This document shows, one piece after another, positions 31,512-56,921 of a stretch of DNA of 64,000 bases. Position numbers and translations under genes: made by a program. The notes under the pieces were generated by a model that worked only from the letters and a program-made list of their open reading frames with translations, did not search any database and was not told the DNA's origin. Each line of letters begins with the position of its first letter. Position 1 is the stretch's first letter. Location: positions 124,001 to 188,000 of IMG/VR virus record IMGVR_UViG_3300027759_006101. One strand, written 5' to 3'.

Positions 31512-31664
31512 CCACTACCATATCCCTTGGCAAATGTCAAGGGATATTTATTTAAATATTTTTTTTGCAATCTATCTTAAGGTACGGTATTTACCGTACC
31601 TGAAAAATCTTGTCAAATAAATTTATTTTCTTGCATAGTATATACAATATGATATACTAACCCT

Positions 31665-31919
31665 ATGAGCAAAGTATACAGAATGATTCTTGGTCAAGAC
31701 CCTAACAGCACTAGACCTATTGGCACTGAGAAAACGCTTAAGGAAGCCAAAGAATATATCCTATCAAGGGCTTATAATAATGACTATTGTGCTATTTACG
31801 TAGCAGACAATGAGAATCCGGCTGGTGAATTGGTAGGACGTTGGATTATAAAGAATAAGAAACTTACATCGTTTGAAAAAAAATCAAAGCCAATTGATTA
31901 TAAAAAACAAATCTTTTGA
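31665..31919 (+). CDS. hypothetical cassette protein
   Basis: TTGCAT-N17-TATACT leaderless promoter. Confidence 0.7.
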   Translation: MSKVYRMILGQDPNSTRPIGTEKTLKEAKEYILSRAYNNDYCAIYVADNENPAGELVGRWIIKNKKLTSFEKKSKPIDYKKQIF

Positions 31920-31949
31920 CAGTTATATAAAAGGTGATATAATAACAGT

Positions 31950-32210
31950 ATGAACGATTACAACGGTTGGAAAAATGAAACTACTTGGACTGTCAATATC
32001 TTATTTATGGAAACTATTGAACAGCTGATAAAAGATGGATACGAGCTTGATGAAGTAGCCACACATATTTATCGTAAACTTGGCGCAGATGAAATGAATT
32101 GGTACGGTAGTCAGATTTTTGCAAGTGCGTGGAAGCAAATTGACTGGTGGACGCTTGTTGCCAGAGCAAAAGAAAATGTAGAAAAAGATGCTGTAAGTAT
32201 TGCAGAGTGA
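31950..32210 (+). CDS. conserved phage protein (YNGWxNxxTW motif)
   Basis: YNGWKNETTWTV...IDW. Confidence 0.75.
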   Translation: MNDYNGWKNETTWTVNILFMETIEQLIKDGYELDEVATHIYRKLGADEMNWYGSQIFASAWKQIDWWTLVARAKENVEKDAVSIAE

Positions 32211-32234
32211 TATAAATAAGGATACTATATAGAC

Positions 32235-32333
32235 ATGAACAATTTAGTACATTCTCTTCTCGTAGGTGCTGGTCTTTTGGTTCTTATGCTGGGTTTGCTT
32301 TCAACCCTAACATTGAACAAGCCAGCTGAATAA
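32235..32333 (+). CDS. 32-aa single-TM peptide (below ORF track cutoff)
   Basis: MNNLVHSLLVGAGLLVLMLGLLSTLTLNKPAE; TATATAGAC-ATG context as at 30638 and 31044. Confidence 0.6.
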   Translation: MNNLVHSLLVGAGLLVLMLGLLSTLTLNKPAE

Positions 32334-32467
32334 ATAAATCCCAAGAATTTTTCTTGGGATTTATCTTTAGGTCTGGTAGAGACCAGACCTTTAAAATATT
32401 GTCAAATTTATTTATTTTCTTGACAGGTATATACTTTATGATATACTGACTGAGTAAGGAAAAAGAT

Positions 32468-32758
32468 ATGGAAATTAAAACTACTGACTACGGTGTTTGC
32501 AAAGTGTCTAAAGGTTATTACCCTAGCAATGGTAATATGTGGTTAATTCTCACTGATGCTGATGGACAGCAAGTGACAGTTATTACCTCTAACATCATTC
32601 CTATGGCAGATGGTGAATTCTGTGGAAACATTACCAACATTGGCAAAATTCTGTGGAATGATATTCTTGCTTCTGGTCTTATCGAAGAGACTGGTGAGTT
32701 GGTTCAGTCAGGATTTGTCCAATTTCCTGTATGCAAGCTGGTCAAAGAACTAGCATAA
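32468..32758 (+). CDS. DUF4313-like protein
   Basis: GLIEETG..VQSGFVQFPV motif. Confidence 0.6.
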   Translation: MEIKTTDYGVCKVSKGYYPSNGNMWLILTDADGQQVTVITSNIIPMADGEFCGNITNIGKILWNDILASGLIEETGELVQSGFVQFPVCKLVKELA

Positions 32759-32909
32759 CTTCTACAACAAAGATAAATCTCAAGAAAAATTCTTGAGATT
32801 TATCTTTAGGTCTGGTATTTACCAGACCTTTATTTTTTTGTCAAATTTATTTATTTTCTTGACAGGTATATACAGTGTGATATACTATTCTTGTAAGGGA
32901 GTTAGACAG

Positions 32910-33131
32910 ATGACATATTCAGAATACATTGCGAAGTGTGAAGTCGCAAAGACAGCGTTTCAGTGCAATGTTACATCTTCACTTATAGTTGATAATGCAA
33001 CACCAGAAAAACGGTTGGAGTGGATTGCCGAAGACCTTGCAAAACTTAATGCAGAGTTGGAAGTGATTGGTAAGGCGTTTGATGAACAGGATGAGGTTGG
33101 TGACCCGTTTGTAGGCTTGGAGGCAAAGTAA
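32910..33131 (+). CDS. cassette protein A1
   Basis: GGGAG SD; paralog of 33533..33745 (WIAED/WIADD, GDPFV). Confidence 0.7.
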   Translation: MTYSEYIAKCEVAKTAFQCNVTSSLIVDNATPEKRLEWIAEDLAKLNAELEVIGKAFDEQDEVGDPFVGLEAK

Positions 33132-33391
33132 TGGCTGTTGAGACTATTGGTTATTGGAACGCTTCTTACATCTTTGAAAGTATTGAGTTGAAAGATGATG
33201 AGCAGGAGCAGTTTTTGGAAAAGTTCACTACAGGTGATGATCACACTTCATTGACATTGGTAAGCAGATACAAGTTTTTTACAATGTTGAAAGACTTTGT
33301 GAAGAATCTTGATGATCAGGAGCCACAAGAAGCAGTACTGGCAGTTCAACACTGGTATCCTGAAGCCAAGTATGTTAACGTAGAAGCATAA
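33131..33391 (+). CDS. cassette protein B1
   Basis: Paralog of 33745..34014. Confidence 0.7.
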   Translation: MAVETIGYWNASYIFESIELKDDEQEQFLEKFTTGDDHTSLTLVSRYKFFTMLKDFVKNLDDQEPQEAVLAVQHWYPEAKYVNVEA

Positions 33392-33532
33392 AAAGAAGAT
33401 AAATCCCAAGAAAAAATCTTGGGATTTATCTTTAGGTATGTGAATTACATACCTAAATTTTTTTGTCAAATATATTTATTTTCTTGACAGGTATATACAA
33501 TGTGATATACTATTCTTGTAAGGGAGTTAGAT

Positions 33533-33745
33533 ATGAACATTCAAGATTACGACAAAGTGAGAGCCACAGTTCTCAACGCATTGTACTGTAGCGTACAGTC
33601 TGCATTGGAGATGAACTATGTATCGGAAACCTGCAAGTTACACTGGATTGCAGATGACTTCAAAGTTGCAAAAGACAAGTTGCAAAAGATTGAAGAAGAG
33701 ATGCGAGTTTTGCTTGGAGACCCGTTTGTAGAAGAGGTAAAGTAA
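33533..33745 (+). CDS. cassette protein A2
   Basis: Paralog of 32910..33131. Confidence 0.7.
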   Translation: MNIQDYDKVRATVLNALYCSVQSALEMNYVSETCKLHWIADDFKVAKDKLQKIEEEMRVLLGDPFVEEVK

Positions 33746-34014
33746 TGGAAACAGTAGACTTTGTAAACGCAACGGAATTTTTTGATGGAATGGAACTTGG
33801 TCATGGTGAATCAGACGAGTTCCTTAGCAAGTTCACATATGGTGATATCCGCACTACATTCACCTTGGTAAGCCGTGGAACATTCCTTTCATATCTTAAG
33901 ACCTTCATTACTGATTGTGAAGACATCTATGAGAAAGATGTTGTGATGGAAGCATTGAGAGATTACAATCTTTCAGTTGATGTTCGCATTAAGTATGTAA
34001 ACATCGAAGCGTAA
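33745..34014 (+). CDS. cassette protein B2
   Basis: FL.KFT.GD..TLVSR..F...KYVN.EA shared with B1. Confidence 0.7.
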   Translation: METVDFVNATEFFDGMELGHGESDEFLSKFTYGDIRTTFTLVSRGTFLSYLKTFITDCEDIYEKDVVMEALRDYNLSVDVRIKYVNIEA

Positions 34015-34108
34015 TAAATAAATCCCAAGAAAAATTCTTGGGATTTATCTTTAGTTATGGTATAACCATAACTGAAAAAATTTGCAAGAAAAAAATCTTG
34101 CAATCTTT

Positions 34109-34327
34109 TCAGAAAGTTAATGGTCTTGTTTTAATAACCAATTCCATATCTTCAATATCACCTTGAGGAACGAATGTGCAAAAATTCTCAAAACACTCGC
34201 AATAAGGTGCCCAACCATTCCACCCTTTACATGATGGTTTACAATTGGTGCTTTCAAACTTATGCCATCTCTCTTCAGCCAGCAAAGCCGACCAAAGAGA
34301 GAGAGCCTTTTGCCTGTAATTGTTCAT
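34109..34327 (-). CDS. small Cys-containing protein
   Basis: Last gene of a 3-gene coupled operon. Confidence 0.6.
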   Translation of the reverse strand: MNNYRQKALSLWSALLAEERWHKFESTNCKPSCKGWNGWAPYCECFENFCTFVPQGDIEDMELVIKTRPLTF

Positions 34328-34563
34328 TTAAGTCTGTAACTCTTGTCTAGTCTTAATTCTATCACACCATTGTTGTCTTCGGTAGCACCACGGTAAACAT
34401 TATCGCCAACACGAACATAACAACGTACAAAGTTTCCAAATTGTTCCCAGAATAATGGTTTGCGCATCTTGCTGTATCGTTTACCATTATGAATTCCAAC
34501 GACTTGAATCTTGCTGTCAGTTACCCAACGTGTACCACCATTGTTCAAGTAATAATGCGCCAT
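34324..34563 (-). CDS. hypothetical protein
   Basis: Coupled ORF. Confidence 0.6.
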   Translation of the reverse strand: MAHYYLNNGGTRWVTDSKIQVVGIHNGKRYSKMRKPLFWEQFGNFVRCYVRVGDNVYRGATEDNNGVIELRLDKSYRLK

Positions 34564-34763
34564 TACTTATTAACTCCTCTTTGCGTGTAAAAGTTATTGC
34601 CATCGCACAGAATCCATTCTGTGCAGTACTTGGATGCATAGTACTCGCCCAAGTCGATTGGGTCACGTCCTGATGCAAGAAGGATTCCATTGTAGTGTGC
34701 AGTGTAGAGCATCTTTGGCACACGGCTCTTGAATTTTACGATTACCTTGTCTGTAGTGTTCAT
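34563..34763 (-). CDS. hypothetical protein
   Basis: Leaderless promoter upstream. Confidence 0.6.
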   Translation of the reverse strand: MNTTDKVIVKFKSRVPKMLYTAHYNGILLASGRDPIDLGEYYASKYCTEWILCDGNNFYTQRGVNK

Positions 34764-34871
34764 AGCAATAGTATATCATCTTGTGTATAGGATGCAAGAT
34801 ATATCTTTTAAAAATAGTTCTTGACACCCTATATAATAAGTGTTATACTTAAGCAGTAAGGAGTTAGAACA

Positions 34872-35075
34872 ATGGATTATATTGAAGCGGAGTTGGAAGC
34901 AAGAATTTTTCCTAGCGTTGATGTTGACCCAATGGATTATATGACGGATGAGGAACTGGATGAACAGTTCGACAATGAACCAGATTGTGATGACCAATGG
35001 GCTGATGCAAACGCTTTGGCATCAGCAGGCTGGGGAACTGATGAAGACTACGGTGGAGGCGATATCGAATGGTGA
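34872..35075 (+). CDS. very acidic small phage protein
   Basis: ALASAGWGTDEDYG; TTGACA promoter, AAGGAG SD. Confidence 0.75.
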   Translation: MDYIEAELEARIFPSVDVDPMDYMTDEELDEQFDNEPDCDDQWADANALASAGWGTDEDYGGGDIEW

Positions 35076-35219
35076 TATCATATCCCTTGACAAAAGTCAA
35101 GGGATATTTTTATTTAACAATATTCGTAAGGAATGGTATTTACCATTCCTATAAAAAAACCTCAAGAAAAATTCCTGAGGTTTTTTTTGGAAGTAATGCA
35201 AGCCCAAGTTTATTATACG

Positions 35220-35597
35220 TTAATAAACCCTTGATGTATGGCAAATTACAACATCACCAAACAAATGCACATTATCTCTCTTACAAAGTTTTTGGTAAAT
35301 TGCACTTGCTATCATGTTATAGTTACCAATCTCTACATCATCCTTGAACTTTGTTTTAAGCTGTCCTTCTTCATCACAAATGAAAATCACGGATTCATCA
35401 CCTGTGTATGCGATTTCAAAGTAATCGTAGTTAGCATCTGACTTGATTTTGTCAATATCAAAGTACTGGTTGCCATCTATAACTTTGTCAAATTCACGTT
35501 CCTTGATATCACCCTCTATAGAAATATAAAAGCCTCTGATGTTGTTGCGTACTTCTTCAAGAATACGCTCAATGTTTACCAATGCTACAATGTTCAT
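35220..35597 (-). CDS. DUF3846-like protein
   Basis: ICDEEGQLK..N.IAS..LFGDVVI. Confidence 0.6.
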   Translation of the reverse strand: MNIVALVNIERILEEVRNNIRGFYISIEGDIKEREFDKVIDGNQYFDIDKIKSDANYDYFEIAYTGDESVIFICDEEGQLKTKFKDDVEIGNYNMIASAIYQKLCKRDNVHLFGDVVICHTSRVY

Positions 35598-35743
35598 AAC
35601 TAACTCCTTACACTATGATTATATCAGGCTGTATATATTGTGCAATATATTTTAAATATTTGACAAAATTTTATAGGTACGGTATTTACCGTACCTTAAG
35701 ATAGTTCACAATAAAAAAATTCCCCATTTCTGGGGAACTTTTT

Positions 35744-36088
35744 TTACTTTGCGTAGTCAGTGCTTTGTCTGGTAGTGCTTCGGAACATTTCAGCTACTTT
35801 GAACGCTTCAGACAAGTATGCATGAATTGCACTAGTCAAAGCCAAAGATGATATGTTATTATCAGTGAGGGTTTTGATTGGCATAGAATATTTCAATTCT
35901 GTGTCATCATTGAGAAAATGGTATACATCTGCTTCTATAGCATCCATTGTTGGACTTATGACTATATCAATAACACCATTGCCATGTGCTACACTTAAGA
36001 CTATGTCTTTTTGACCAAATTCTATCGCTTGCTTTACAAACTCTTCGGTAGTGTCAACGCTCTTAAAACCGTTCTTAGAGAACAACAT
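35744..36088 (-). CDS. hypothetical protein
   Basis: Likely start MLFSK. Confidence 0.55.
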   Translation of the reverse strand: MLFSKNGFKSVDTTEEFVKQAIEFGQKDIVLSVAHGNGVIDIVISPTMDAIEADVYHFLNDDTELKYSMPIKTLTDNNISSLALTSAIHAYLSEAFKVAEMFRSTTRQSTDYAK

Positions 36089-36410
36089 ATTTGTATTGCT
36101 TCTTTCCTTGTAACTCTCTTGATGATTGTACCATAACCATCCACATAGTAGACAACAAACTAACTGTAGCAAGACCTGCTACAAACATCATTGTGGTGTC
36201 AATGTTGCCACCCAAGATGTATTCAATAATCATAGAAAATGGCGTGAGCAACAAAACGCTACACGTCATAACTGTTATACACTCAAGCAATGTATATAGT
36301 GCTTTAGGCATATGCTTTGTAATCTGCCAAAAAGCAACAATGCCACCAGTGTAAAGAAAAACCTGTATTGTTCTATTAATAATCTCTTCTGTCATCCTGC
36401 TACCTCCCAA
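36075..36410 (-). CDS. three-TM membrane protein
   Basis: Hydrophobic segments. Confidence 0.6.
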   Translation of the reverse strand: MGGSRMTEEIINRTIQVFLYTGGIVAFWQITKHMPKALYTLLECITVMTCSVLLLTPFSMIIEYILGGNIDTTMMFVAGLATVSLLSTMWMVMVQSSRELQGKKQYKYVVL

Positions 36411-36613
36411 TCTTCTGCCAATACATCTTCAGTCTTTAAAGTATAACAAGCCCAAAAACTCATTTCTTCACCAGTAGACCAAACACATTTAAATTTAAGT
36501 TCTGATTCTTCTAGTTTTACCAAGATAACATTAGTAGAATTAGGATTCCACTTTTTGCTTCTTGTGATAGTCTTACCATCACGGAGCATTGGCAATACCT
36601 GTTCAAGTTTCAT
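36392..36613 (-). CDS. DUF2829/Tad2-like protein
   Basis: LEQVLPMLRDGKTITRSKKW...EDVLAEDWEV. Confidence 0.65.
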   Translation of the reverse strand: MKLEQVLPMLRDGKTITRSKKWNPNSTNVILVKLEESELKFKCVWSTGEEMSFWACYTLKTEDVLAEDWEVAG

Positions 36614-36682
36614 AGAGTAAGTATATCATCTATCATATACTTGTCAATAAGAATTTTTGCCCCATTTTTACTGGGGCATTAT

Positions 36683-36964
36683 TCAAAAATTATTCTCTTG
36701 CTTAATAACTTCTAATTTATTTAATAATTCTTCAGGGTATTCTTCTAATATATCTGCTAACTTAACTAAATTAGATGCTGTAGGAATTCTCTTACCATTA
36801 AGCCAGTTACTTACTTGTGGCTGTTTGACTCCCATCATCTCTGCAATTTCTACCTGTGTAAATTTAGTCATTATAACACTTTTTTTCTTCAATGTGTCTT
36901 GAATAATATTTACCTCTTCATTGGTATAGTTGGTATAGTTGGTGTTAAAAAGAATTTTTTTCAT
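36683..36964 (-). CDS. XRE-family HTH regulator
   Basis: TQVEIAEMMGVKQPQVSNWLNGKRIP..NLVKLADIL. Confidence 0.88.
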   Translation of the reverse strand: MKKILFNTNYTNYTNEEVNIIQDTLKKKSVIMTKFTQVEIAEMMGVKQPQVSNWLNGKRIPTASNLVKLADILEEYPEELLNKLEVIKQENNF

Positions 36965-37117
36965 AGAGAAACCTTTCTGTTGTTGTTACATCCTGTAGTA
37001 TATCACATCGTACATATGATTAATTTTGAGTAAAAATTTTTTTTGATAAAATTTTGAAGTTATGGTAATACCATAACTAAAGATAAATCCCAAGATTTTT
37101 CTTGGGATTCTTTTAGT

Positions 37118-37450
37118 TTATTCGCCAGCAGTTACATATTCAGCTGACCAGTCAATTTTTGCATCGTCACTCCAATGTGCTGGTAAGTTTGATTCTACAA
37201 AGAATGCAAACGTTTGGGAATCAGTGTCTTCAGTATCCCAATAAACAGCCGCTTCAAAGTAAGTACCGAAGTCATGGCTTTCACGCTTGATACCAAAATA
37301 AGCGTTTTCAGGGATGTTAACAAACCGTTCTTTTAAAAGGTTGACAAACTTGAAAACTTCATTACGCATTTCAGTGTAGTCAACTTCTGGGCTAACTTGG
37401 ATGCATTCTTCTTCAAATGGAACTGGTCCAAGGGTCATAAAATCTCTCAT
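37118..37450 (-). CDS. conserved acidic phage protein
   Basis: LGPVP.EE.C.QV...HDFGTY.E; AAGGAG SD. Confidence 0.7.
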   Translation of the reverse strand: MRDFMTLGPVPFEEECIQVSPEVDYTEMRNEVFKFVNLLKERFVNIPENAYFGIKRESHDFGTYFEAAVYWDTEDTDSQTFAFFVESNLPAHWSDDAKIDWSAEYVTAGE

Positions 37451-37802
37451 ATCAAACTCCTTACACCAATAGTATAACACAAATTATATAAGATGCAAAT
37501 TTAAAAAATATATTTGACAAAAATTTATAGGCACGGTAAATACCGTGCCTTAAGTAAAATGTCAAAAAAATAGGAGGCCTAAGCCTCCTTGTCTTCATCT
37601 TTGAACTTATCATCCAAACAACTCTGGCATCCAACCCACCATTTATCATTGTAGCTCCAGCACTTACCTTGACCTGGCTGAACCACTACTTTGCACCAAC
37701 AGCACTTCTTAGCATACAAGTTCTTCATAACAACCTCCACAGTAAATATACCAGATTGTATATATAATGTCAAGAAAAATACCCCATCTCTGGGGTATTT
37801 AT

Positions 37803-38075
37803 TTAATCCATGATGTTGGCTAATCGGTCTTCTTTGGTTTTGAAGTGACCAGAAAGCCAACCTTCACGCTTTGGCTCTACATTCTCTGCCTGTGTGACAA
37901 GCGATAGTTGGTGCTTGTAAACTTCCTCAAGAGCAGATATTTGTGTTGCGATTTGATTTGCCACTTTACTGTCGATACGCATCATATCCATCTGAATGTC
38001 CTTGAGAGAAACAATCTGATTGCGTGTACAAAACAAAATCTCACGAAGCCTATCCGAATTCCTTGTAGTTCTCAT
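37803..38075 (-). CDS. hypothetical protein
   Basis: AAGGAGG SD. Confidence 0.65.
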   Translation of the reverse strand: MRTTRNSDRLREILFCTRNQIVSLKDIQMDMMRIDSKVANQIATQISALEEVYKHQLSLVTQAENVEPKREGWLSGHFKTKEDRLANIMD

Positions 38076-38196
38076 AACTACCTCCTTACTTACAAAGAGA
38101 GTATATCAAGTAGTATATGACGTGTCAAGTATTATTTAATTTGAATACTCAGGTGTCACACGATATAATACCTTATCAATTGAAGGGTATAGGACG

Positions 38197-38574
38197 ATGG
38201 TTTGCTACAACACAGAATGGGAAAACCCACTTTATTGGTTTGACAAGTTACTAACTTACACGGAACACGCTGAATTACGTACGATTGAAAGAGATTTGCC
38301 TTTAGTAGATTTTCTTCCACTAGAATCAAAGTTTCTGTATCGCACCCTTAAGAGGGATGTCTATTCAATGACATTTGAGACTGTAGTGAATCACAAAAGA
38401 ATGGAAATTGCAATCAATTCGTTAGGTTACGTTATGACTGTGTATCCTGTGCTAATCACCAAAGCTGACAAGTTTCAATATAAGTATAAGCAATATCTTG
38501 GTGCATTCAAGCAACCTGATGATTATTGCCCGCCAGTCATCAGCGATTTCAATTTCTTGGAAGGAACAATATGA
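38197..38574 (+). CDS. hypothetical protein
   Basis: 125-aa ORF with promoter. Confidence 0.6.
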   Translation: MVCYNTEWENPLYWFDKLLTYTEHAELRTIERDLPLVDFLPLESKFLYRTLKRDVYSMTFETVVNHKRMEIAINSLGYVMTVYPVLITKADKFQYKYKQYLGAFKQPDDYCPPVISDFNFLEGTI

Positions 38575-49135: not shown

Positions 49136-49140
49136 CAAAA

Positions 49141-49452: not shown

Positions 49453-49590
49453 AATATTACCCAAGATGTGAGAAGAATGTAACGGGCATACGAACCATGT
49501 TATTTCCACTCTTCTCACATTTTTCCAGAATCACCACATTCTGAGTTTGTTCTTGATGCTGTAATCACCTTGAACAAATATAGCATATCA

Positions 49591-49827: not shown

Positions 49828-49851
49828 GTGTACATTAAGAAAACACTATTG

Positions 49852-50448
49852 TCAAGGTTTATAATCTTTGGAGATTACTTTATTAAATTGCCTAGGGTCA
49901 TACCAATAGCATCCAACACAAGTGCCTGCATAATTAGACTCTCCAACAATCCATCCAAATGAATAACCAAGCCTTTTTGCATCGTATCTTTCATTTGTTT
50001 CCTCACACGTCTTACAATGAGTTCTCTTTGATAAATTTACGTTCCTCAATAATGGCTGAAAATCATCTTCATTTTGATTTTCTACGCTATTATAAGTATC
50101 AGAACTATATCGTCCGTCTTTATGGTCACACTCGATATTTTCTCCACCAACATCAACAACACGGCATCTTTGTTTTCTTATTGATTTGAAAATATCAGTT
50201 CGTATACGTTTTTCAATTGATGTTTCTCTATAACCATCAAGACGAATTCCTATAGTGCGATTTTTATCTTTTTCTCTATGAACAATGAAATCTTTTAATT
50301 GTCCATCAGAGCGGTTCCAATCTCCACCATTTTTAGTTTGGAATTCTACGCCGGGATATAAAGTTTCCAATTCACTATATAGCCAAAGACGAGTTTTACC
50401 ATCACTATCTGGTTGTGACGCTTGAAGAAACATTTGTACTTTTGTCAT
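49852..50448 (-). CDS. NlaIII/IceA1-like HNH restriction endonuclease
   Basis: FL...PD.DG.TR, NGG.W.R, IE.DHKDGR, DFQPL, KR..CK.C..T..R.DA and CVGCY.YDP match the IceA1/NlaIII pattern. Confidence 0.75.
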   Translation of the reverse strand: MTKVQMFLQASQPDSDGKTRLWLYSELETLYPGVEFQTKNGGDWNRSDGQLKDFIVHREKDKNRTIGIRLDGYRETSIEKRIRTDIFKSIRKQRCRVVDVGGENIECDHKDGRYSSDTYNSVENQNEDDFQPLLRNVNLSKRTHCKTCEETNERYDAKRLGYSFGWIVGESNYAGTCVGCYWYDPRQFNKVISKDYKP

Positions 50449-51139
50449 TTAATTTAGCGATTCTCTCTGTTGCTTTTGTGTAATAAGTTTCATCCAATTC
50501 ACAACCCATAAAGTTTCGTCCAGTGTTATAGCAAGCCACTGCACAAGAAGCAGAGCCAGCAAAACAATCCAAAACAGTATCGCCTTCATTGGAGTGTTTG
50601 GTAATTAAAGCTTGCAGTAAATTGAGAGGCTTTTGAGTAGGATGGAAACGGTCTCTCTCATGACAGATTGCAAACTCATAAATTCCCTTATCATATTGAG
50701 AATGAAATGTTGGTTTACTTCCTTTGATAGCAGTAAGGGCTATCTCTCTTGAATTGGTGAGATAATTAATCTTCGAATTGATAGGAACAGGATTTGTCTT
50801 TACCCATTCAATAAACCGGAGTTGCTTAAACTTGGCACTCTCAATCCAATTCTTAAGAGTCTCGATTTTCCACAAGTCATAGAAACAAATTAATGTTCCA
50901 CCTGGCTTGAGGATACGATAAGATTCTTCCATAACCTTATCAAGAACAAAGATTTCATTATCCCACTCTCCAAATTCATAGGACATCTTAAATCTTTCAA
51001 CACCCTTCTCTCCACAACTCTCGAATCCTGTTGCTCGTGAAATTGTATATGGTGGGTCAATCAAAACAAGATTTACTGATTTATCTGCAACACGAGGCAA
51101 AAAATCAAGACAAGATTCATTATTTAAAACGATAGACAT
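50405..51139 (-). CDS. N4/N6 DNA methyltransferase (beta class), likely cognate of the adjacent nuclease
   Basis: IDPPY, HPTQKP, VLDCFAGSAS; overlaps the nuclease start. Confidence 0.9.
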   Translation of the reverse strand: MSIVLNNESCLDFLPRVADKSVNLVLIDPPYTISRATGFESCGEKGVERFKMSYEFGEWDNEIFVLDKVMEESYRILKPGGTLICFYDLWKIETLKNWIESAKFKQLRFIEWVKTNPVPINSKINYLTNSREIALTAIKGSKPTFHSQYDKGIYEFAICHERDRFHPTQKPLNLLQALITKHSNEGDTVLDCFAGSASCAVACYNTGRNFMGCELDETYYTKATERIAKLNDKSTNVSSSVTTR

Positions 51140-51319
51140 TTGGCTTCCTCTTATTCATAATACGATATATCTTTAGGGTATGCAAGTTTAAAAAATTATT
51201 TGATCAATATTTTTAGGAATGGTATTTACCATTCCTTAAGAATAATTGCAAAAAAATCCCTCTTCCTATGAGCGAAGAAGAGGGATAGAACACAGAATTA
51301 TGAGCGGATTCTGTGTACT

Positions 51320-51814
51320 CTATTCTATCACAAGAAATTCAGTTGACAAGTCTTCTTTTTGGACAGGCTTTTCAGTGACAAAATAACTTTCTCGATTTAC
51401 CCAATGGCATCCAGAGATTACAACAAAGCAATCATCAGAATCAACCATTGTCCAAATGTTTTCTGGATTCTGCTTCTTTACAAATTCCCATTGGTCATCT
51501 TCAGAGTAATCGAAAGAACATCCCTCGAAACTAGTTTCCTCGAATTGATTCTTTAATGGTTTGTATTTCTCAACCCATTCATCATAGGTAAATACTCTCC
51601 TAAGAGAAAGAATATTCATCTCTGTCACTTCACAAATACCAACCTCATAATTGCCAATAAATGAATTAATATATTCTTCAGCAATCAATTTATCTTCGGT
51701 ATTGGTTGTTTGGATATACCCTTGCTTTTCAACATTTATAATTGGCTTACCGGGATATTTCCAACTAAACTTAACATTGACTTCGTAGGTTGGGGTAATA
51801 ATAGTGTTTTCCAT
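51320..51814 (-). CDS. phage protein (MENT start)
   Basis: IWTMVD...SG.HWVNR.YFVTEKP is typical of phage hypotheticals. Confidence 0.7.
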   Translation of the reverse strand: MENTIITPTYEVNVKFSWKYPGKPIINVEKQGYIQTTNTEDKLIAEEYINSFIGNYEVGICEVTEMNILSLRRVFTYDEWVEKYKPLKNQFEETSFEGCSFDYSEDDQWEFVKKQNPENIWTMVDSDDCFVVISGCHWVNRESYFVTEKPVQKEDLSTEFLVIE

Positions 51815-51914
51815 ACCTGTATTATATCATATGTTGTATGTACTGCAATAGGAAATCCCCTTCTTGTCGGAGAAGGGGATTGGTTTCACTTGTGGAGATA
51901 AGACAAGTGAAAAG

Positions 51915-51986
51915 TGGCTCCAGCAGAAGTCGAATCTGCACTCAAAATCTTAAAAGGATTCTGCTTTACCGTTAAGCTATGGAACC
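51915..51986 (-). tRNA. tRNA-Lys(TTT)
   Basis: GGTTCCA/TGGAGCC, GAATC-CTTTTAA-GATTT, GCAGATTCGACTTCTGC. Confidence 0.85.
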
Positions 51987-52116
51987 AAACTAAAAGAAAG
52001 AGGTTATGTGTTGCCTGTGATGGAGACTAGTTATCCAGAGCACAATTCCCACTTCACATTAAAAATTTCTTTCACGACAAGACTCAGATTACTCTTTTGT
52101 CTAACCTCTCTCAAAA

Positions 52117-52197
52117 TCCTCCAGACGAGATTCGAACTCGTAAGGCTTGCGCCAACGGATTTTAAGTCCGTCGTGTATACCGTTCCACCACCGGAGG
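52117..52197 (-). tRNA. tRNA-Leu(TAA)
   Basis: CCTCCGG/CTGGAGG, ACGGA-CTTAAAA-TCCGT, variable arm GGCGCAAGCC, GAGTTCGAATCTC. Confidence 0.9.
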
Positions 52198-52317
52198 ATA
52201 CGCTAATATTATACCATTAGGGTTAGCCGATTCAAGAACTATCTATACATTTATTTTTCTTTGACAAAAAAATAAAGGGATGGTATTCACCATCCCTTTT
52301 AAAATATACTAAATATT

Positions 52318-53067
52318 TTATCTAGTCCAAACCTCGAAACTGGCTCCAGAACCAGACATTCCAGTTATAGCAACACCTGAAACATATAAGTATCGTCTGT
52401 CAAGTGTTGTTAATTTTGCAGCATTTGTGTATGTGACAAGAATACCAGCAGTGTATGATAAAACAATAGCATCACTTCCGCCATCATTTGCTCTAACACA
52501 ACTTAAGCTAATTGTTCCAGTACTATTTGCTGCCCCGTATTTTCTTACTTCTAAAAGAGCACCAGCATTATCATATGTACCTGATGTTCCTGAAAATGTT
52601 CCAGCAGTATTTCTCTCGTGCAGCTTGTAAATCAATTCGTTATTGTAAGTTCTTCTATATATGTCTCTAAAGCTTGATAAGCCAGTGCCAGTTGATGTTG
52701 GTGTAGTTTGTACGAAATTTACTGTTCTACTAGTTGTTTTTGAATTAAAGTAATCTCTGAATGATTCTCCGACTACAGCATTGAAATATGAATTCAAAGC
52801 TCCTAAAGTCCCAGAATATACAGGATCAATGGTTGATGGCAAAGAAATTTCAGCACTTCTTAAAGCTTGTGAAAGTGTTAATGTAGAATCAGTATTTGCG
52901 TCAGTGCTGCTATTATCCCAAGAATCAATAATTAAGTCACGAGTTGTCTTGGTATATGAAGCAGCAGTCCCAGCTAAAAGCAACAATTCATCTTGAAATT
53001 GCTTATCAGCTAATCCCAAATTAATTGCAATACTTGTAAACACACCAGCTTGATAAACATACGGCAT
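52318..53067 (-). CDS. Thr/Ser/Gly-rich protein, possibly virion structural
   Basis: Low charge, beta-rich C-terminus. Confidence 0.55.
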   Translation of the reverse strand: MPYVYQAGVFTSIAINLGLADKQFQDELLLLAGTAASYTKTTRDLIIDSWDNSSTDANTDSTLTLSQALRSAEISLPSTIDPVYSGTLGALNSYFNAVVGESFRDYFNSKTTSRTVNFVQTTPTSTGTGLSSFRDIYRRTYNNELIYKLHERNTAGTFSGTSGTYDNAGALLEVRKYGAANSTGTISLSCVRANDGGSDAIVLSYTAGILVTYTNAAKLTTLDRRYLYVSGVAITGMSGSGASFEVWTR

Positions 53068-53229
53068 AAGTTTTTCCTCTATATGGATTTTCTTTTTTCT
53101 CTACCTCTAATCCTGTTTAAAAATATTTCTGATAAGTTTTTTTAGGAATGGTAAAGACCATTCCTCCAATAAAATGACAAAAAAATATCCCCCAAATTTC
53201 TTCGGGGGATTTTCTTGACAAAACCGAAA

Positions 53230-54375
53230 CTATGGGTTCAGTTCGTTGTAGATGCGCTTGACATCATCTTGGGTAGTATGATGAAGGAGTGTCTCAAAGG
53301 CAATCCGGGTCTGGTCATCATAGAAATCAAACTCACGTCTGATTGACATAGCCAAAGCCGGACGACGAGATGAGAACAGATGACCAACCAATTGGATAAG
53401 ATTGACCGTTTGCTTCGTCCAATCTACACTCTGAATCTTGTTGTCAAGAGGAAGAGTCAATTGGATTTCAGTCTTAGATTCCTCATCCTCATTCTCACAG
53501 TCGCAACAGTTTCCGCACTGTTCACACTCACAACACCAAGAATTGTATTCTGAATCGCAACCAGAGCAGAGGTCTTCTTCATCATCATCGTTCCAGATAT
53601 CAACATCATCATCTTGGTCAGTCTGGAAGCGTGAAGCATACAATGGGTCAGTGAGGTCGATTTCATACTCCCCAACTACCTTATACTTACAGGTGCGGAG
53701 TTTCTGGAATTCACAGTCGGTTGGAATGGATACAACGTCAGATGGATTGATTTCCACCAACATAATGTGACCATACCCACCTGAAAATTGCTTTGCATAT
53801 TCAATGGTTCCAGCGTGAAAGCCATATGAACATCCAATATTCTTATCATCGTCCACCTTGTTGCGTGGCATCTCAAGAACTGCATCTACAGTGTTGAGGA
53901 ACTTGCCAGAGTGCTTGTCGGTGTAATCTTCACGGACTGCTTTGTAAGCACAGAAATTGCCATTATCTGTGATAGGCAATGCACGATGCTCAAGGAAGGT
54001 GTACAATTCATCGACTGCACGTTTTGATGGATTGAGGTTTAACTTCAAGATAAACTTGAAGAGGTGTACACAATCCAACCCTGCCTCAAGGAACGAAAGC
54101 ACACGGGTTGCAAGAGTGGAGTGAACTGGCTCATCAAAGACGTAGAGGTTGCCATCCTTAACTTCAATGCCCTCATACTTGGCATAGAGGCTCTTAAGGC
54201 GCAATTCTGGATTGACAAAAGAGATGAATGCATCCCAGTCATTTACCTTATATGCTTCTAAAGCATTCGTGAACAATTTGTTTCCTGCGTTGATTGAATG
54301 GGACTTGCCATCCAATACTACAGTAATGAAACCTGATTGAGGGTCAGGATTTACAATACGGGCTGTAACGGTCAT
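53230..54375 (-). CDS. rIIB: rIIB-like protein
   Basis: ELY.FL...LPIT.NG.F.AYKAV..DY.D.HSG, MPR.KVDDD..CS.GFH, V.I.P.DVVSIP.D..K.R.C.Y.VV; downstream of rIIA. Confidence 0.85.
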   Translation of the reverse strand: MTVTARIVNPDPQSGFITVVLDGKSHSINAGNKLFTNALEAYKVNDWDAFISFVNPELRLKSLYAKYEGIEVKDGNLYVFDEPVHSTLATRVLSFLEAGLDCVHLFKFILKLNLNPSKRAVDELYTFLEHRALPITDNGNFCAYKAVREDYTDKHSGKFLNTVDAVLEMPRNKVDDDKNIGCSYGFHAGTIEYAKQFSGGYGHIMLVEINPSDVVSIPTDCEFQKLRTCKYKVVGEYEIDLTDPLYASRFQTDQDDDVDIWNDDDEEDLCSGCDSEYNSWCCECEQCGNCCDCENEDEESKTEIQLTLPLDNKIQSVDWTKQTVNLIQLVGHLFSSRRPALAMSIRREFDFYDDQTRIAFETLLHHTTQDDVKRIYNELNP

Positions 54376-54599
54376 AGTGTTTCTTTTTACCTTTATAACT
54401 GGAACGATATACCAGTTTACCATATCTACAATCATCTGCAAGCCAAACTCGAAAAATAAATAGTGCAAGCTCGAAAAAAATATTTTCTTGCATATATTTT
54501 TTAGGGATGGTAATTACCATCCCTTCGAAATTCTATCAAAAAAAAAGGAGGCTCGAAAGCCTCCTTTTCCTATTGGACTATTTGTTTTGAGGAAACCTA

Positions 54600-56708
54600 T
54601 TAGTCCAATAAGCCCTCACTTTTCAGATAATCTTGCGACTTAAGGTACTCATTGACAATATACCAGTACTTTTCGGTCGGAGATTCACTATAATGTGATG
54701 ATTTTTGTGAATATCCGAACAAATTACGCAAAATTGGGTATTTAATTAGGGTTTTATCTACTAATTCTATGCATTCATTGTAAATGTCAAGATACAAACC
54801 ATAACCTTGCTTCTTAAGGAATGAAACTCTTTCACCTTGGTTTGAAATGGACAAACCAGAACTGTAATACTCTGATATGATTTCCTTTAGACGGGTTAAG
54901 TCTCTGTCAGTGTCTACCATATTTTTTCTGAAGGCATATTGCCATTCATCAGACACATCAAGCGATATCAGATACTGATTGAATTTCATAATTTCTTCAT
55001 CGGTTTGATTGTAAAGCGACTGCTGGATGTAATCAGTTATCTCAATCCATCCAGAACCCAATTTTTCAATGTCGCAATACTTGACACCGTAAATGTTGTC
55101 ACATCTGATTCCTAATGTATGAGCATTGGACAGCAATTCTTTGAATGCTTCCATTGTCTTAATATTTGTACCATTAGGGTGTTTGGCTACAGGGAGGAAT
55201 CGCTTAATCTCAACATAGATTCCTTCGGATTGTTGGAGAGAAAGCGTGGTCGATTTCCAAGTGTTTCGCAAGGTGCTTTGATGGGGACAATAACTGTAGA
55301 CTTCGCTTGTGGCAAACGACCCAGCAGATTTGCCTGTGACCTTGCTGTATTGCAATGTTGATACATCGACAAAATTTGCACCCTGCCATTCTGGGTGGTT
55401 AACAATTGAATCGCAATCAGCCTTTGACGCAAAACGCAAAAGGAATCCCGACAACTTTGAATAACCAGAATTCATAATTCTCTGGCGAATCGAATTTTGA
55501 GGGACATTGCCATAGTAGGCAAATAAGGTTTGTCCCTCTACTATGTTCAGAGATGATGAATTTTTGAATGACGAACGTGCATCATTTCGGATTTCTTCTA
55601 TCTCCTTAATGGCAGGGTAATCTTTCCTGTAAAGAAGCATATTGGAATTTGTTCTATATGCTTTGCCACCATAGATTGAAATGAGATTAAAAACATCTCT
55701 TATCTGATTAGTGTTTTCAAATTCAAGAGCAAATTGATAGAAACTCTTGCATTCAGATAGTCTCTCATCAATTTGACCCTTGACTGTGGAATGAATTCCT
55801 TTCAGTGCCTCAAAGATATATTGTTTGGTCTTTGTATTCATTTCCAAAGATTCACGGGAGGCAGATGGAACAACACTACCTATCGGGGCATAGAGCTTAA
55901 CCTTTAGATTGCGGAAGCACTCTACAGTCTTGAATTCATCACTCGTCAAACCCAAATCATCAATGTGAAATGGATAGTTAACATTCCCCATTCTGACACA
56001 AGACTTTTGATTGAATCCCCAAGTGTGAATAGCATAGTCTTCAGTACTGACAACGAAAGATTTTTCGACCTGACGTTGCAACAAATTTACAACCCGGTCA
56101 TCATTCTTAACTATTGGCTGTGGGTTGAATTCTGCAAGGAACGAACCTGCTACCTCACGGAATTGGGACAGGTCGATTGTCTTAACAACGATATCAATTG
56201 CCAATCCAGTTTCAGATGTTGCTTCCTCAGATATCTTGGAAATCTTACCGATGTTGGTTTCATCAATATATGCGAGGTAAACTGACTTTACACCATTGTG
56301 ATATGACGTGATGGTGAAATCGTTTACATAACAGAATGCAGACTTGCTACCAAGACCCAACATTCCAACCTGCTCATTTGTTCCACGTTTGGTTGATTCG
56401 CCATACGAAACAAAGATATTGTAAACTTCAGACTCTGACAGACCCTTGCCAAAATCACGGATAGTCAAAGAATTCTTGAATGCTGTTGGGAATGATACCT
56501 CAATCGGTCGGCTTGGAATACCTGCATCAATGTGTGCGTCAAATGCATTTGTGCAGTATTCACGAATGATGGCAAGAGGCTTGTTGCTATACAACTGGTT
56601 GCGGAGAATGCCAAAGATATGACCAATGTTAGACTGCTTGACAGTAAAGAATGCTTCGGACTGGATGCCAGATGACTGGACTTGAATTGTCGATTCAGCG
56701 ATTTTCAT
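54600..56708 (-). CDS. rIIA: rIIA-like protein (N-terminal GHKL domain)
   Basis: LYSN..A.IREY.TNA.DAH, IRDFGKGLS, STKR..N..VG.LGLGSKSAF, PSASRESL. Confidence 0.88.
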   Translation of the reverse strand: MKIAESTIQVQSSGIQSEAFFTVKQSNIGHIFGILRNQLYSNKPLAIIREYCTNAFDAHIDAGIPSRPIEVSFPTAFKNSLTIRDFGKGLSESEVYNIFVSYGESTKRGTNEQVGMLGLGSKSAFCYVNDFTITSYHNGVKSVYLAYIDETNIGKISKISEEATSETGLAIDIVVKTIDLSQFREVAGSFLAEFNPQPIVKNDDRVVNLLQRQVEKSFVVSTEDYAIHTWGFNQKSCVRMGNVNYPFHIDDLGLTSDEFKTVECFRNLKVKLYAPIGSVVPSASRESLEMNTKTKQYIFEALKGIHSTVKGQIDERLSECKSFYQFALEFENTNQIRDVFNLISIYGGKAYRTNSNMLLYRKDYPAIKEIEEIRNDARSSFKNSSSLNIVEGQTLFAYYGNVPQNSIRQRIMNSGYSKLSGFLLRFASKADCDSIVNHPEWQGANFVDVSTLQYSKVTGKSAGSFATSEVYSYCPHQSTLRNTWKSTTLSLQQSEGIYVEIKRFLPVAKHPNGTNIKTMEAFKELLSNAHTLGIRCDNIYGVKYCDIEKLGSGWIEITDYIQQSLYNQTDEEIMKFNQYLISLDVSDEWQYAFRKNMVDTDRDLTRLKEIISEYYSSGLSISNQGERVSFLKKQGYGLYLDIYNECIELVDKTLIKYPILRNLFGYSQKSSHYSESPTEKYWYIVNEYLKSQDYLKSEGLLD

Positions 56709-56921
56709 AATAGGTTTCCTCACTAGAATATTACCATCTGTGTATATGGTGTGCAAGTACTATATTTGAAATAAAAAAAATTGACAAATTTTTTTAGGTC
56801 TGGTGTCTACCAGACCTGTCATAGAATGTCAAATTATTTTTTTAGCTGCATTTAAGCACAAATAAGGACGCTATAAGAGCATTTAGTGCAATTATAACGT
56901 CCTTATTGGAAGATTTGTGGG

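What the first reader, a model, noticed from the sequence alone, without database searches (positions are those of the whole stretch)
31565..56832. The elements have the geometry of two face-to-face sigma70 promoters sharing a broken -10 in the hairpin loop
Seen: from an outer TTGACA/TTGCAA box, exactly 17 bp lead to the palindrome centre, which reads (T/C)GG-TAWWTA (e.g. 35660 TTGACA-17-TATTTA; 37514 TTGACA-17-TAAATA; 52261 TTGACA-17-TATTCA). This is an extended -10 lacking the conserved final T, and the arrangement occurs on both strands. The real cassette promoters lie separately nearby. Inference, as an alternative or addition to the recombination model: RNA polymerase traps or roadblocks that insulate cassettes, titrate host holoenzyme or pull DNA in during entry, or hairpin promoters needing a phage factor (cf. 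N4 virion RNAP hairpin promoters).
Basis: partly seen in the sequence, partly recalled or inferred. Interest (0 to 1): 0.7.

Follow-up and report, generated by a model that had tools for sequence, protein, structure and literature searches.

The report
Mirrored half-promoter hairpins at phage cassette borders
An uncultivated 358-kb freshwater phage carries 25 copies of a ~52-bp palindromic element that looks like two upstream promoter halves fused head to head; it cannot be a working promoter, and it marks the borders where early-gene cassettes are reshuffled between related phages.

Summary
The window holds 25 copies (30263-56817) of a 21/22-nt hairpin, and there are none elsewhere in the 358-kb genome. 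TTG sits exactly 17 bp from the hairpin's central T-A on 43 of 50 flanks; 18 flanks read TTGACA. Chance copies of the same 22-mer in bacterial genomes lack these boxes.

Each half matches the parts of the phage's own early promoters that polymerase reads as double-stranded DNA: -35 TTG, a 17-bp spacer, TG at -15/-14, and T-12/A-11. The "-10" is only the closing pair plus 4-nt loop of a 9-bp stem. That stem pairs perfectly in 467 of 468 cells, with ten compensated variants. T-7 occurs in 0 of 183 half-sites, and the loop varies and occurs in both orientations, so a productive promoter is excluded.

The element is a separate module. Twelve consensus promoters lack it, and only 5 of 25 copies look like terminators. 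It lies between an upstream terminator and the real promoter in a region of genes without known families. Among relatives, its left and right flanks reassort at the hairpin.

The closest known system is the PeSL cassettes of T4-type phages. Polymerase docking remains plausible but untested. An N4-like hairpin promoter and an integron-like site are not supported.

The parts
30248..30299 (+). A element (hairpin 30263-30284 plus both boxes)
   Evidence: Distal box ATGCAA, proximal box TTGACA
30884..30935 (+). A element (hairpin 30899-30920)
   Evidence: Boxes TTGTTG / TTGACA; no consensus promoter downstream
31565..31616 (+). A element (hairpin 31580-31601)
   Evidence: Boxes TTGCAA / TTGACA; real promoter at 31631-31658
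32354..32405 (+). A element (hairpin 32369-32390), directly after B hairpin 32334-32364
   Evidence: Boxes TTGGGA / TTGACA; real promoter at 32420-32447
32793..32844 (+). A element (hairpin 32808-32829), directly after B hairpin 32769-32807
   Evidence: Boxes TTGAGA / TTGACA; T-rich tail, so terminator-like; real promoter at 32859-32886
33419..33469 (+). A element (21-nt hairpin 33434-33454), after B hairpin 33396-33432
   Evidence: Boxes TTGGGA / TTGACA; real promoter at 33484-33511
34038..34088 (+). A element (21-nt hairpin 34053-34073) where the two gene blocks converge
   Evidence: Distal box TTGGGA; no promoter downstream
35114..35165 (-). A element (hairpin 35129-35150)
   Evidence: Boxes TTAACA / TTGAGG; flanked by C hairpin 35080-35107
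35660..35711 (-).
   Evidence: Proximal TTGACA at 35660, distal TTGTGA; real promoter at 35618-35645
37043..37093 (-). A element (21-nt hairpin 37058-37078), next to B hairpin 37086-37109
   Evidence: Boxes TTGATA / TTGGGA
37514..37565 (-).
   Evidence: the outer boxes pair in the DNA fold; real promoter at 37471-37498
38732..38783 (-). A element (hairpin 38747-38768; one mismatch, at the loop-closing pair)
   Evidence: Proximal TTGACA; B hairpin at 38786-38811
39818..39869 (-). A element (hairpin 39833-39854), next to B hairpin 39857-39890
   Evidence: Boxes TTGAGG / TTGGGA; T-rich tail
40378..40428 (-). A element (21-nt hairpin 40393-40413), after the terminator of the abundant RNA
   Evidence: Boxes TTGCGA / TTGAGG
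41234..41284 (-). A element (21-nt hairpin 41249-41269), after B hairpin 41274-41303
   Evidence: Proximal TTGACA; followed by C hairpin 41198-41225
41889..41940 (-). A element (hairpin 41904-41925)
   Evidence: Boxes TTGACA / TTGAAA; real promoter at 41847-41874
42388..42439 (-). A element (hairpin 42403-42424), overlapping the stop codon of the upstream ORF
   Evidence: Proximal TTGACA; T-rich tail, so terminator-like; real promoter at 42345-42372
44136..44187 (-). A element (hairpin 44151-44172)
   Evidence: Boxes TTGCAA / TTGCAA; central hexamer TGGTCA has no A-11
47031..47081 (-). A element (21-nt hairpin 47046-47066), TTGACA on both sides
47719..47770 (-). A element (hairpin 47734-47755)
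   Evidence: Boxes TTGCAT / TTGTCA
51200..51251 (-). A element (hairpin 51215-51236)
   Evidence: Boxes TTGATC / TTGCAA; the loop is flipped in relative L013 although the flanks are near-identical
52261..52312 (-).
   Evidence: Proximal TTGACA; T-rich tail; real promoter at 52208-52235
53129..53180 (-). A element (hairpin 53144-53165)
   Evidence: Boxes CTGATA / TTGTCA
54488..54539 (-). A element (hairpin 54503-54524)
   Evidence: Boxes TTGCAT / TTGATA; canonical terminator at 54543-54568
56781..56832 (-). A element (hairpin 56796-56817), TTGACA on both sides; last copy
29963..59992 (.). Span holding 21 of the 24 strict consensus extended -10 promoters of the whole genome (20 within G000 154-184 kb); 9 of them start 28-40 nt after an A hairpin, and 12 have no A element or box
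32334..41303 (.). B hairpin family, a repeated two-way terminator-like stem with CCCAAGA / TCTTGGG arms: 32334-32364, 32769-32807, 33396-33432, 34018-34048, 37086-37109, 38786-38811, 39857-39890, 41274-41303. It abuts A so that its TTG lies at the distal box position.
30207..41225 (.). C hairpin family, with stem arms that contain CCCTTGAC: 30207-30230, 30840-30867, 31520-31547, 35080-35107, 41198-41225

Best explanation
The element is a discrete palindromic DNA module of about 52 bp that marks the borders of early-gene cassettes in a jumbo phage dependent on host polymerase.

Each half reads TTG(aca), 9 nt, AGG-N-A-Y-GG-TA. This copies the part of the phage's own sigma70/sigmaA-type early promoter that is read as duplex DNA: -35, a 17-bp spacer, TRTG at -17 to -14, and T-12/A-11. 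Two such halves are fused head to head at -11/-10. The apparent -10 is therefore the closing pair and 4-nt loop of a 9-bp hairpin, and it cannot support open-complex formation.

Shown here: the element sits between the terminator of one unit and the consensus promoter of the next. It is kept perfectly self-complementary through compensated changes. It is not needed by the promoters and is usually not a terminator. Its two flanks reassort at it among related phages.

Inferred: it works like the PeSL motifs of T4-type phages, as a conserved patch at which homologous recombination swaps whole cassettes without breaking genes. Its ability to form a hairpin or cruciform in AT-rich flanks next to strong promoters would focus breaks or strand exchange there. 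The promoter-like halves may also let host holoenzyme dock without firing, which would insulate neighbouring units. That second role is untested.
For: Placement and orientation: the order terminator, A, 9 nt, TGTCAA(AT), 14-15 nt AT-rich, -35, -16/17-, TGnTATAMT, ribosome-binding site is seen in the window and in 24 related viral loci.

Base pairing: 89 of 94 boxed elements have 9 of 9 Watson-Crick stem pairs. Among 52 distinct 22-mers, 467 of 468 stem cells pair. There are ten different triplets at positions 4-6, all compensated (156 of 156, against a mean of 93 and maximum of 112 in shuffles). There are no G-T pairs in pairs 1-8, and mismatches occur only at the loop. As DNA the fold is a 9-bp stem with a 4-nt loop, z = -3.5 to -7.4.

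Loop: it occurs in both orientations in the sense frame (AA 31, TT 22), independently of the flanks.

Independent module: 12 consensus promoters without a hairpin also lack the TGTCAA box, and only 5 of 25 elements have a T-rich tail.

Region: 20 of the genome's 24 strict consensus promoters, and 25 of 25 elements, lie in 154-184 kb. All 20 small ORFs tested have no Pfam family at the default threshold.

Shuffling: cassette order differs in relatives. Ends of homology blocks are about 3.5-fold enriched within 40 bp of a hairpin, 31% against 8.8% expected. Element 30263 has the left flank of L015 (60 of 60 identical) and the right flank of L016, with the hairpin as the shared piece. Element 31580 shows the same pattern.

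PeSL features are taken from PMC2839356 and PMC4122927.
Against: No experiment or read data shows recombination happening at the hairpin itself. Any cassette border would show independent assortment of its flanks, and intergenic regions in general collect alignment ends.

The contig-level joints at the repeats are ambiguous, because the flanks are repeated.

Plain homology does not explain why TTG is held at exactly 12 nt from the stem on both sides, or why AGG and GGTA are invariant. Some protein must read them. No recombinase or structure-specific nuclease was identified.

Hybrid, non-palindromic hairpins would be expected from crossovers between different variants, yet none is seen.
Confidence: 0.45

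Rival explanations
1. Non-productive holoenzyme docking site. Host sigma70/sigmaA holoenzyme binds either half through -35, TRTG and T-12/A-11, but cannot open the DNA because the -10 lacks T-7 and is followed by a G+C-rich stem. Parked polymerase would insulate units, raise local polymerase concentration next to the real promoter 21 bp away, or catch polymerase released at the upstream terminator.
For: Every duplex-read promoter determinant is present at the right spacing: TTG on 43 of 50 flanks, full TTGACA on 18, a sharp peak at one offset only, T 0.87 at -15, G 0.98 at -14, T 0.97 at -12 and A 0.85 at -11. The real promoters of the same phages show the same -17 to -14 pattern. The AT-rich stretch between the two back-to-back -35 boxes is A-rich on the strand that would serve the antisense site as an UP element. 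Elements with a 21-nt hairpin keep each box at the same distance from its own stem, which fits two independent half-sites rather than a rigid dimer.
Against: Binding was not tested. Recognition by polymerase does not explain why the unread stem positions 4-6 stay perfectly complementary. Five or six window elements have lost T-12/A-11 but keep pairing. Closed complexes are short-lived and are poor traps or roadblocks (established knowledge). The distal box is only TTGnnn and partly coincides with a terminator T-tract or the B stem.
Confidence: 0.25
2. Operator or structure-specific site for a phage or host DNA-binding protein, for example an early shut-off regulator or a cruciform-binding factor, that reads TTG, AGG and GGTA on each half.
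For: There are invariant blocks inside and outside the stem with strict two-fold geometry. The site lies about 75 bp upstream of the start of strong early promoters. The element is restricted to the early region.
Against: No candidate protein was found; the 20 small ORFs tested are without families, apart from one weak helix-turn-helix hint. A dimer on linear duplex DNA would not require compensated changes at unread positions, nor tolerate the 21/22-nt variation. Half of the consensus early promoters have no such site.
Confidence: 0.15
3. A working promoter of unusual type: a supercoil-gated or two-way promoter giving short RNAs, or a hairpin promoter used with a phage factor (N4-like polymerase or one of the phage sigma factors).
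For: Like N4 early promoters, the stem has conserved bases plus variable bases that only need to pair (PMC4496689). The phage encodes three to four sigma-like proteins. An antisense start would run straight into the two-way B hairpin and give a very short RNA that ordinary RNA libraries would miss.
Against: No PF00940 or PF00562 polymerase gene was found, and the 3479-aa ORF is a PKD/RCC1 repeat protein. The loop is variable and occurs in both orientations, unlike the conserved N4 loop. The half-site never occurs outside the palindromes, so it is not a general promoter for a phage sigma factor. T-7 is absent in 183 of 183 half-sites. No RNA signal was seen.
Confidence: 0.08
4. An RNA-level element: a back-up intrinsic terminator, attenuator or processing hairpin in read-through transcripts.
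For: Five of 25 elements have a T-rich tail and were called terminator-like. At 42403 and 52276 the hairpin is the only structure after the upstream stop codon. RNA stem stability is -9 to -15 kcal/mol.
Against: Twenty of 25 elements are followed by an A-run, not a T-run, and separate terminators usually precede the element. There are no G-U pairs in about 750 stem pairs, which is unusual for a selected RNA helix. The symmetric TTG/CAA boxes and the free loop orientation are DNA-like features.
Confidence: 0.1

Closest known systems
PeSL (promoter-early stem-loop) cassettes of T4-type phages (PMC2839356, PMC4122927)
   Same: Both are repeated intergenic composite motifs of roughly 100 bp, with a consensus sigma70-type early promoter, an AT-rich stretch upstream of -35 and a stem-loop. 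Both are concentrated in a hyperplastic region of small genes without homologues, and flank cassettes that are inserted, deleted and reordered between relatives.
   Different: Here the stem-loop is a separate, sequence-conserved palindrome with its own flanking TTG boxes at fixed spacing. It is additional to an ordinary terminator, is usually not a terminator itself, and lies at a fixed ~75 bp upstream of the start. In PeSLs the stem-loops are G/C-tract terminators placed variably within or next to the promoter. The host phage is not T4-type by the one test made (no Gp23 match). Mini-circles were not shown.
Productive sigma70/sigmaA promoters with an extended -10 (TRTGn) element
   Same: -35 TTGACA, a 17-bp spacer, TG at -15/-14 and T-12/A-11.
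   Different: T-7 is never present, -10 to -8 vary freely, and the discriminator is replaced by a G+C-rich stem arm. Both strands share one central hexamer.
N4 virion-polymerase hairpin promoters (PMC4496689)
   Same: A short DNA hairpin with conserved and merely pairing stem positions, in the early region of a phage; extrusion by supercoiling is conceivable.
   Different: N4 has a 5-7-bp stem and a conserved 3-nt loop read by a 3500-aa virion polymerase. Here the stem is 9 bp, the 4-nt loop is variable and reversible, and no phage polymerase gene was found.
Engineered promoter regulated by superhelix-induced cruciform extrusion (Horwitz and Loeb 1988, recalled from memory, not checked here)
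   Same: A palindrome spans core promoter elements, so that the linear and cruciform forms would differ in polymerase binding.
   Different: That system was an artificial construct with a working -10. A natural repeated family with a broken -10 has not, to my knowledge, been described.
Integron attC sites
   Same: Structured sites at cassette borders that are recognised by fold more than by sequence.
   Different: attC sites are 57-141 nt, imperfect with extrahelical bases, and need an IntI tyrosine recombinase, and their cassettes lack promoters. Here the stems are perfect and 22 nt, no recombinase gene was found, and the cassettes carry their own promoters.

Membership tests
Productive sigma70/sigmaA promoter | -35 hexamer close to TTGACA | tested here: met
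   TTG on 43 of 50 flanks and exact TTGACA on 18. Across relatives the proximal box is TTGACA in 49 of 72 and TTGATA in 14 of 72.
Productive sigma70/sigmaA promoter | Spacer of 17 +/- 1 bp to the -10 | tested here: met
   The spacer is exactly 17. Match to TTGACA peaks at one offset only (4.4 of 6, against 1.9 and 2.3 at the neighbouring offsets).
Productive sigma70/sigmaA promoter | -10 hexamer with A-11 and T-7 | tested here: not met
   A-11 is present in 85% of half-sites, but T-7 in 0 of 183. Position 14 is A in 64 of 65 because it pairs with T9.
Productive sigma70/sigmaA promoter | Transcripts starting 5-9 nt downstream of the -10 | tested here: inconclusive
   Four lake RNA runs hold only 40466-40710. 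One other run holds low-depth contigs that could be DNA. Only contigs are available, so no 5' ends can be read.
PeSL cassettes | Repeated intergenic motif combining a sigma70-like early promoter, an AT-rich upstream region and a stem-loop | tested here: met
   definition from PMC2839356.
PeSL cassettes | Concentrated in hyperplastic regions rich in genes without homologues | tested here: met
   All 25 elements and 20 of 24 consensus promoters lie in about 8% of the genome. None of 20 small ORFs has a Pfam family.
PeSL cassettes | The stem-loop acts as a transcription terminator or attenuator | tested here: inconclusive
   Only 5 of 25 elements have a T-rich tail, and separate B, C or canonical terminators usually precede the element. 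No functional assay was possible.
PeSL cassettes | Insertions, deletions and swaps between relatives have their junctions in the motif | tested here: met
   Cassettes are reordered in L005 and others. Block ends are enriched 3.5-fold near hairpins. Flanks reassort at the hairpin.
PeSL cassettes | Formation of cassette mini-circles | tested here: inconclusive
   'Goes back' joints occur at hairpins in DNA contigs, but the joined flanks are repeated modules and the overlaps are short.
PeSL cassettes | Host phage is a T4-type myovirus | tested here: not met
   No Gp23 (PF07068) match. The control genomes could not ring for this family, so the test is weak.
N4-type hairpin promoter | Hairpin with conserved bases plus positions that only need to pair | tested here: met
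   criterion from PMC4496689.
N4-type hairpin promoter | Conserved 3-nt loop read by the polymerase | tested here: not met
   The loop is 4 nt (3 nt in the 21-mers), has 24 different sequences among 52 distinct elements, and occurs in both orientations.
N4-type hairpin promoter | Phage-encoded (virion) single-subunit RNA polymerase | tested here: not met
   No PF00940 match, although no control genome rang for this family. The largest ORF is a PKD/RCC1 repeat protein. A very divergent enzyme cannot be excluded.
Intrinsic terminator | G+C-rich stem followed directly by a T-tract | tested here: not met
   The stem criterion is met, but the tail has at least 5 T in 8 nt in only 5 of 25 elements in the sense direction and 1 of 25 antisense. 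The consensus tail is an A-run.
Integron attC or other site-specific recombination site | Cognate tyrosine or serine recombinase or HUH enzyme in the element | tested here: not met
   No PF00589, PF00239 or PF01797 match in the 89%-complete genome.

The most novel reading that the evidence does not exclude
The element is a purpose-built 'half promoter in a mirror': a high-affinity site that binds host holoenzyme only as a closed complex, and that toggles with a cruciform. Polymerase docking, or its attempt to melt at A-11, would be coupled to hairpin extrusion driven by the supercoiling that the neighbouring strong promoter generates. The phage would use this to insulate tandem early units, to hand polymerase released at the upstream terminator on to the next promoter, and to create the structure at which cassettes recombine. 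This would be a natural regulatory DNA device that needs both sigma recognition and intrastrand pairing.
Probability: 0.15. Interest if true: 0.8.

Novelty: new variant of a known kind. Interest (0 to 1): 0.5.

Why it matters
Jumbo phages from metagenomes have almost no experimentally grounded regulatory grammar. This work delimits a host-polymerase-dependent early region from sequence alone and defines its cassette borders. It also extends the PeSL idea of mobile promoter/terminator cassettes to an unrelated freshwater phage lineage.

The extra palindrome combines two normally separate constraints. One is the set of promoter determinants read as duplex DNA. The other is strict self-complementarity. 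That makes a sharp and inexpensive question for in vitro work: does holoenzyme bind a promoter that can never open, and does a cruciform switch that binding?

If the answer is yes, it would be a new kind of natural insulator or polymerase-handling element, and a compact part for synthetic circuits. If the answer is no, the element is still a useful marker for the borders at which accessory and anti-defence genes are exchanged among these phages.

Tried and rejected
- Public phage records: no match to the region or to a large ORF.
- Transcript mapping: one run gave low-depth contigs across 35-41 kb that cannot be told from DNA. Four lake metatranscriptomes contained only 40466-40710. No molecule ends were reported. 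The RNA question therefore stays open.
- DNA joints at hairpins and promoter modules in other populations: not used as evidence, because the flanks are repeated, the overlaps were mostly under about 40 nt, and likeness was set at 90.
- N4-like model: rejected. No polymerase gene was found, and the giant ORFs are a repeat adhesin-like protein and a tail-fibre/virion protein.
- Site-specific recombination (integron, serine-recombinase crossover site, IS200/RAYT hairpin): no enzyme gene, and no hybrid half-sites.
- Promoter for a phage sigma factor: the half-site never occurs alone anywhere in the genome.
- Pairing between the outer boxes: only TTG and A match across the two sides, with no covariation, so an outer helix is not selected. 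It forms only in the three two-sided copies.
- Host or bacterial origin of the hairpin: 41 hits in 596 Gb are singletons without boxes. The exception is one 2.5-kb lake contig binned as Candidatus Nomurabacteria, which is clearly a fragment of a related phage.
- Rfam: only tRNAs.
- A recent paper on large aquatic phages was checked and mentions no such repeats.

Full report
**Context.** The window is G000:C1:124001-188000 of a 358,269-bp IMG/VR virus record with about 33% G+C, estimated 89% complete. DNA runs that hold it are freshwater and lake metagenomes. The genome has three to four sigma-like genes. No single-subunit or multisubunit RNA polymerase gene was detected, and its largest ORF (3479 aa) is a PKD/RCC1 repeat protein. 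The phage should therefore depend on host polymerase. Genes run on the + strand from about 30 to 34 kb and on the - strand from 34.1 to at least 58 kb, converging near 34,050.

**The observation.** A composite pattern gives 16 matches against none in shuffles. Neither the palindrome nor its half-site occurs anywhere else in the genome.

The hexamer lying 9 nt outside the stem, 17 bp from the central T-A, begins with TTG on 43 of 50 flanks. It is TTGACA on 18 flanks in 15 elements. Over 98 distinct elements from the window and 24 related viral loci, the match to TTGACA is 4.4 of 6 at that offset and near background one base to either side.

A scan of bacterial genomes serves as a negative control. 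It returned about 38 unrelated copies of the same 22-mer, and these are ordinary A-run/T-run terminators without the boxes. The geometry is therefore real, specific and non-random.

It is less symmetric than "face to face" suggests. Only three elements carry TTGACA on both sides. In the others the full box lies on the side next to the real promoter and reads antisense to the genes. The other side is only TTGnnn, often the end of a T-run or part of the B hairpin.

**Anatomy in the direction of transcription.** The order is:
- an upstream terminator (a repeated B hairpin, a repeated C hairpin or a canonical one);
- TTG, then 12 nt;
- the A hairpin, then 9 nt that are mostly an A-run followed by T;
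- TGTCAA(AT), then 14-15 AT-rich nt;
- the -35 (TTGACA or TTGCAY), a 16- or 17-bp spacer, and TGnTATAMT;
- a ribosome-binding site or a leaderless start.

The hairpin centre lies about 75 bp upstream of the expected start.

Twenty of the 24 strict consensus extended -10 promoters in the whole genome fall in 154-184 kb, so this is the host-sigma-dependent early region. Twelve of these promoters have no hairpin, and they also have no TGTCAA box. The box therefore belongs to the palindromic element, not to the promoter. Conversely, several elements have no promoter behind them.

**What the hairpin is.** Among 52 distinct 22-mers, pairs 1-9 are Watson-Crick in 467 of 468 cells. Positions 4-6 take ten different triplets, every one compensated (156 of 156 cells; shuffled arms give 93 on average and at most 112). 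No G-T pair occurs in pairs 1-8. Pair 10/13 is broken in 31% of elements, so the structure is a 9-bp stem with a 4-nt loop. The DNA fold gives the same structure.

Position 14 is A in 64 of 65 elements because it pairs with T9. T at -7 occurs in 0 of 183 half-sites. Positions 10-13 are the least conserved in the element. The loop occurs in both orientations relative to the genes (AA 31, TT 22). Five or six window copies have lost T-12/A-11 while keeping the stem. A productive sigma70-type promoter is excluded on this basis.

**How promoter-like the halves are.** Aligned at -12, the half-sites read T/G at -17, A 0.85 at -16, T 0.87 at -15, G 0.98 at -14, T 0.97 at -12 and A 0.85 at -11. The real promoters of the same phages show the TRTGnTA pattern at the same positions. 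Together with -35 TTG(ACA) and a strict 17-bp spacer, each half carries all the determinants that holoenzyme reads as duplex DNA, and none of those it reads after melting.

Elements with 21-nt hairpins keep each box at the same distance from its own stem. This fits two independent halves.

It is not evidence of binding. It also leaves unexplained why unread stem positions must stay complementary.

**Evidence on function.**
- Only 5 of 25 copies have a T-rich tail in the sense direction and 1 of 25 antisense, so the element is not generally an intrinsic terminator.
- RNA data were uninformative.
- None of 20 small ORFs in the region has a Pfam family. Larger genes include an IceA/NlaIII-like nuclease with a methylase, and two HATPase_c_3 proteins.
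- Relatives carry the same modules around different or reordered cassettes. In L005, for example, the unit at 41307-41920 lies between window positions 40352 and 40359.
- Ends of homology blocks are enriched about 3.5-fold within 40 bp of a hairpin.
- The two flanks of a hairpin assort independently. Element 30263 shares 60 of 60 left-flank bases with L015 but not its right flank, and shares its right flank and whole hairpin with L016 but not its left flank. Element 31580 behaves likewise. In L018 both flanks are kept while the hairpin and its 9-nt spacer are replaced.
- No tyrosine or serine recombinase and no Y1 transposase gene was found. General homologous recombination at the conserved module is therefore the economical reading.

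**Comparison with known systems.** PeSLs of T4-type phages are composite early-promoter, AT-rich and stem-loop motifs in hyperplastic regions that mediate modular shuffling (PMC2839356, PMC4122927). The present modules meet those features.

They differ in having a discrete, sequence-conserved palindrome with flanking boxes in addition to an ordinary terminator. They also occur in a phage with no Gp23 match.

N4 hairpin promoters share the mix of conserved and merely pairing stem positions. They require a conserved loop and a virion polymerase, and both are absent here.

**Verdict.** The interpretation as a polymerase trap is plausible at the sequence level but untested. The hairpin-promoter variant is not supported. 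The best-supported role is a PeSL-like cassette-border module whose palindrome forms in DNA. I rate it a new variant of a known kind, of moderate interest.

Noticed in passing
window 40466-40710 (- strand); likely unit about 40430-40735: An abundant stable RNA without a convincing ORF. Four independent lake metatranscriptomes hold contigs 100% identical to this stretch and nothing else from 37-43 kb. A fifth run gives depth of about 170 here against 10 or less nearby. Twenty-four RNA runs from lakes, rivers and estuaries share words with it. It is preceded by a promoter-like site and followed by a B-like terminator. It has no Rfam match, and its fold z-score is -2.1.
   Followed up: partly
window 29963-59992, spacers of the real promoters: The spacers of the consensus early promoters are themselves conserved: an alternating TATATA(C) run at about -26 to -20, often as GTATATAC. 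This could be a second operator-like or DNA-flexibility feature.
   Followed up: no
window 40789-41189 (+) and related loci: Several cassette genes look leaderless, with the ATG 6-7 nt after the -10 (TGATATAAT-TACAGC-ATGGAAAAC type). One is a + strand gene embedded in the - strand block.
   Followed up: no
window 30921-31040; also L004, L018, L022: Some A elements are followed not by the usual promoter but by another conserved ~90-nt motif (ACTACCACAGATC ... TTGTCAAGAAAATAA ... GTATTGCAAT) ahead of the 31044-31511 gene. Its role is unknown.
   Followed up: no
window 32334-41303 (B family) and 30207-41225 (C family): Two further repeated hairpin families lie in the same region. B is a two-way terminator-like stem that abuts A. 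C carries TTGAC inside its stem and occurs both before and after A.
   Followed up: partly
window 48658-52198 (- strand) and 9255-13251 (+ strand): Nine tRNA genes. Four of them (Ser, Met, Lys, Leu) lie inside the hairpin-bearing early region.
   Followed up: no
window 49852-51139 (- strand): An IceA/NlaIII-like nuclease gene overlaps an N6/N4 DNA methylase gene, giving a likely restriction-modification pair carried by the phage. Two HATPase_c_3 proteins (44252-45676, 54600-56756) and a DUF932 protein (56922-58238) are nearby.
   Followed up: no
window 1203-2048 and 15862-16947: A weak Tad2-like (anti-Thoeris) domain match and an ART-PolyVal ADP-ribosyltransferase domain lie outside the hairpin region.
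   Followed up: no
L061 (JAIOQC010000018.1, 2.5 kb, binned as Candidatus Nomurabacteria, Lac Pavin): This contig carries two complete A elements with boxes and matches window modules. It is probably a fragment of a related phage binned with a CPR genome. That is either a binning artefact or a faint host hint.
   Followed up: partly
G000 about 64.6, 69.1, 203.7 and 220.0 kb: Three to four ECF-like sigma factor genes in the phage genome. Their promoters were not sought.
   Followed up: no
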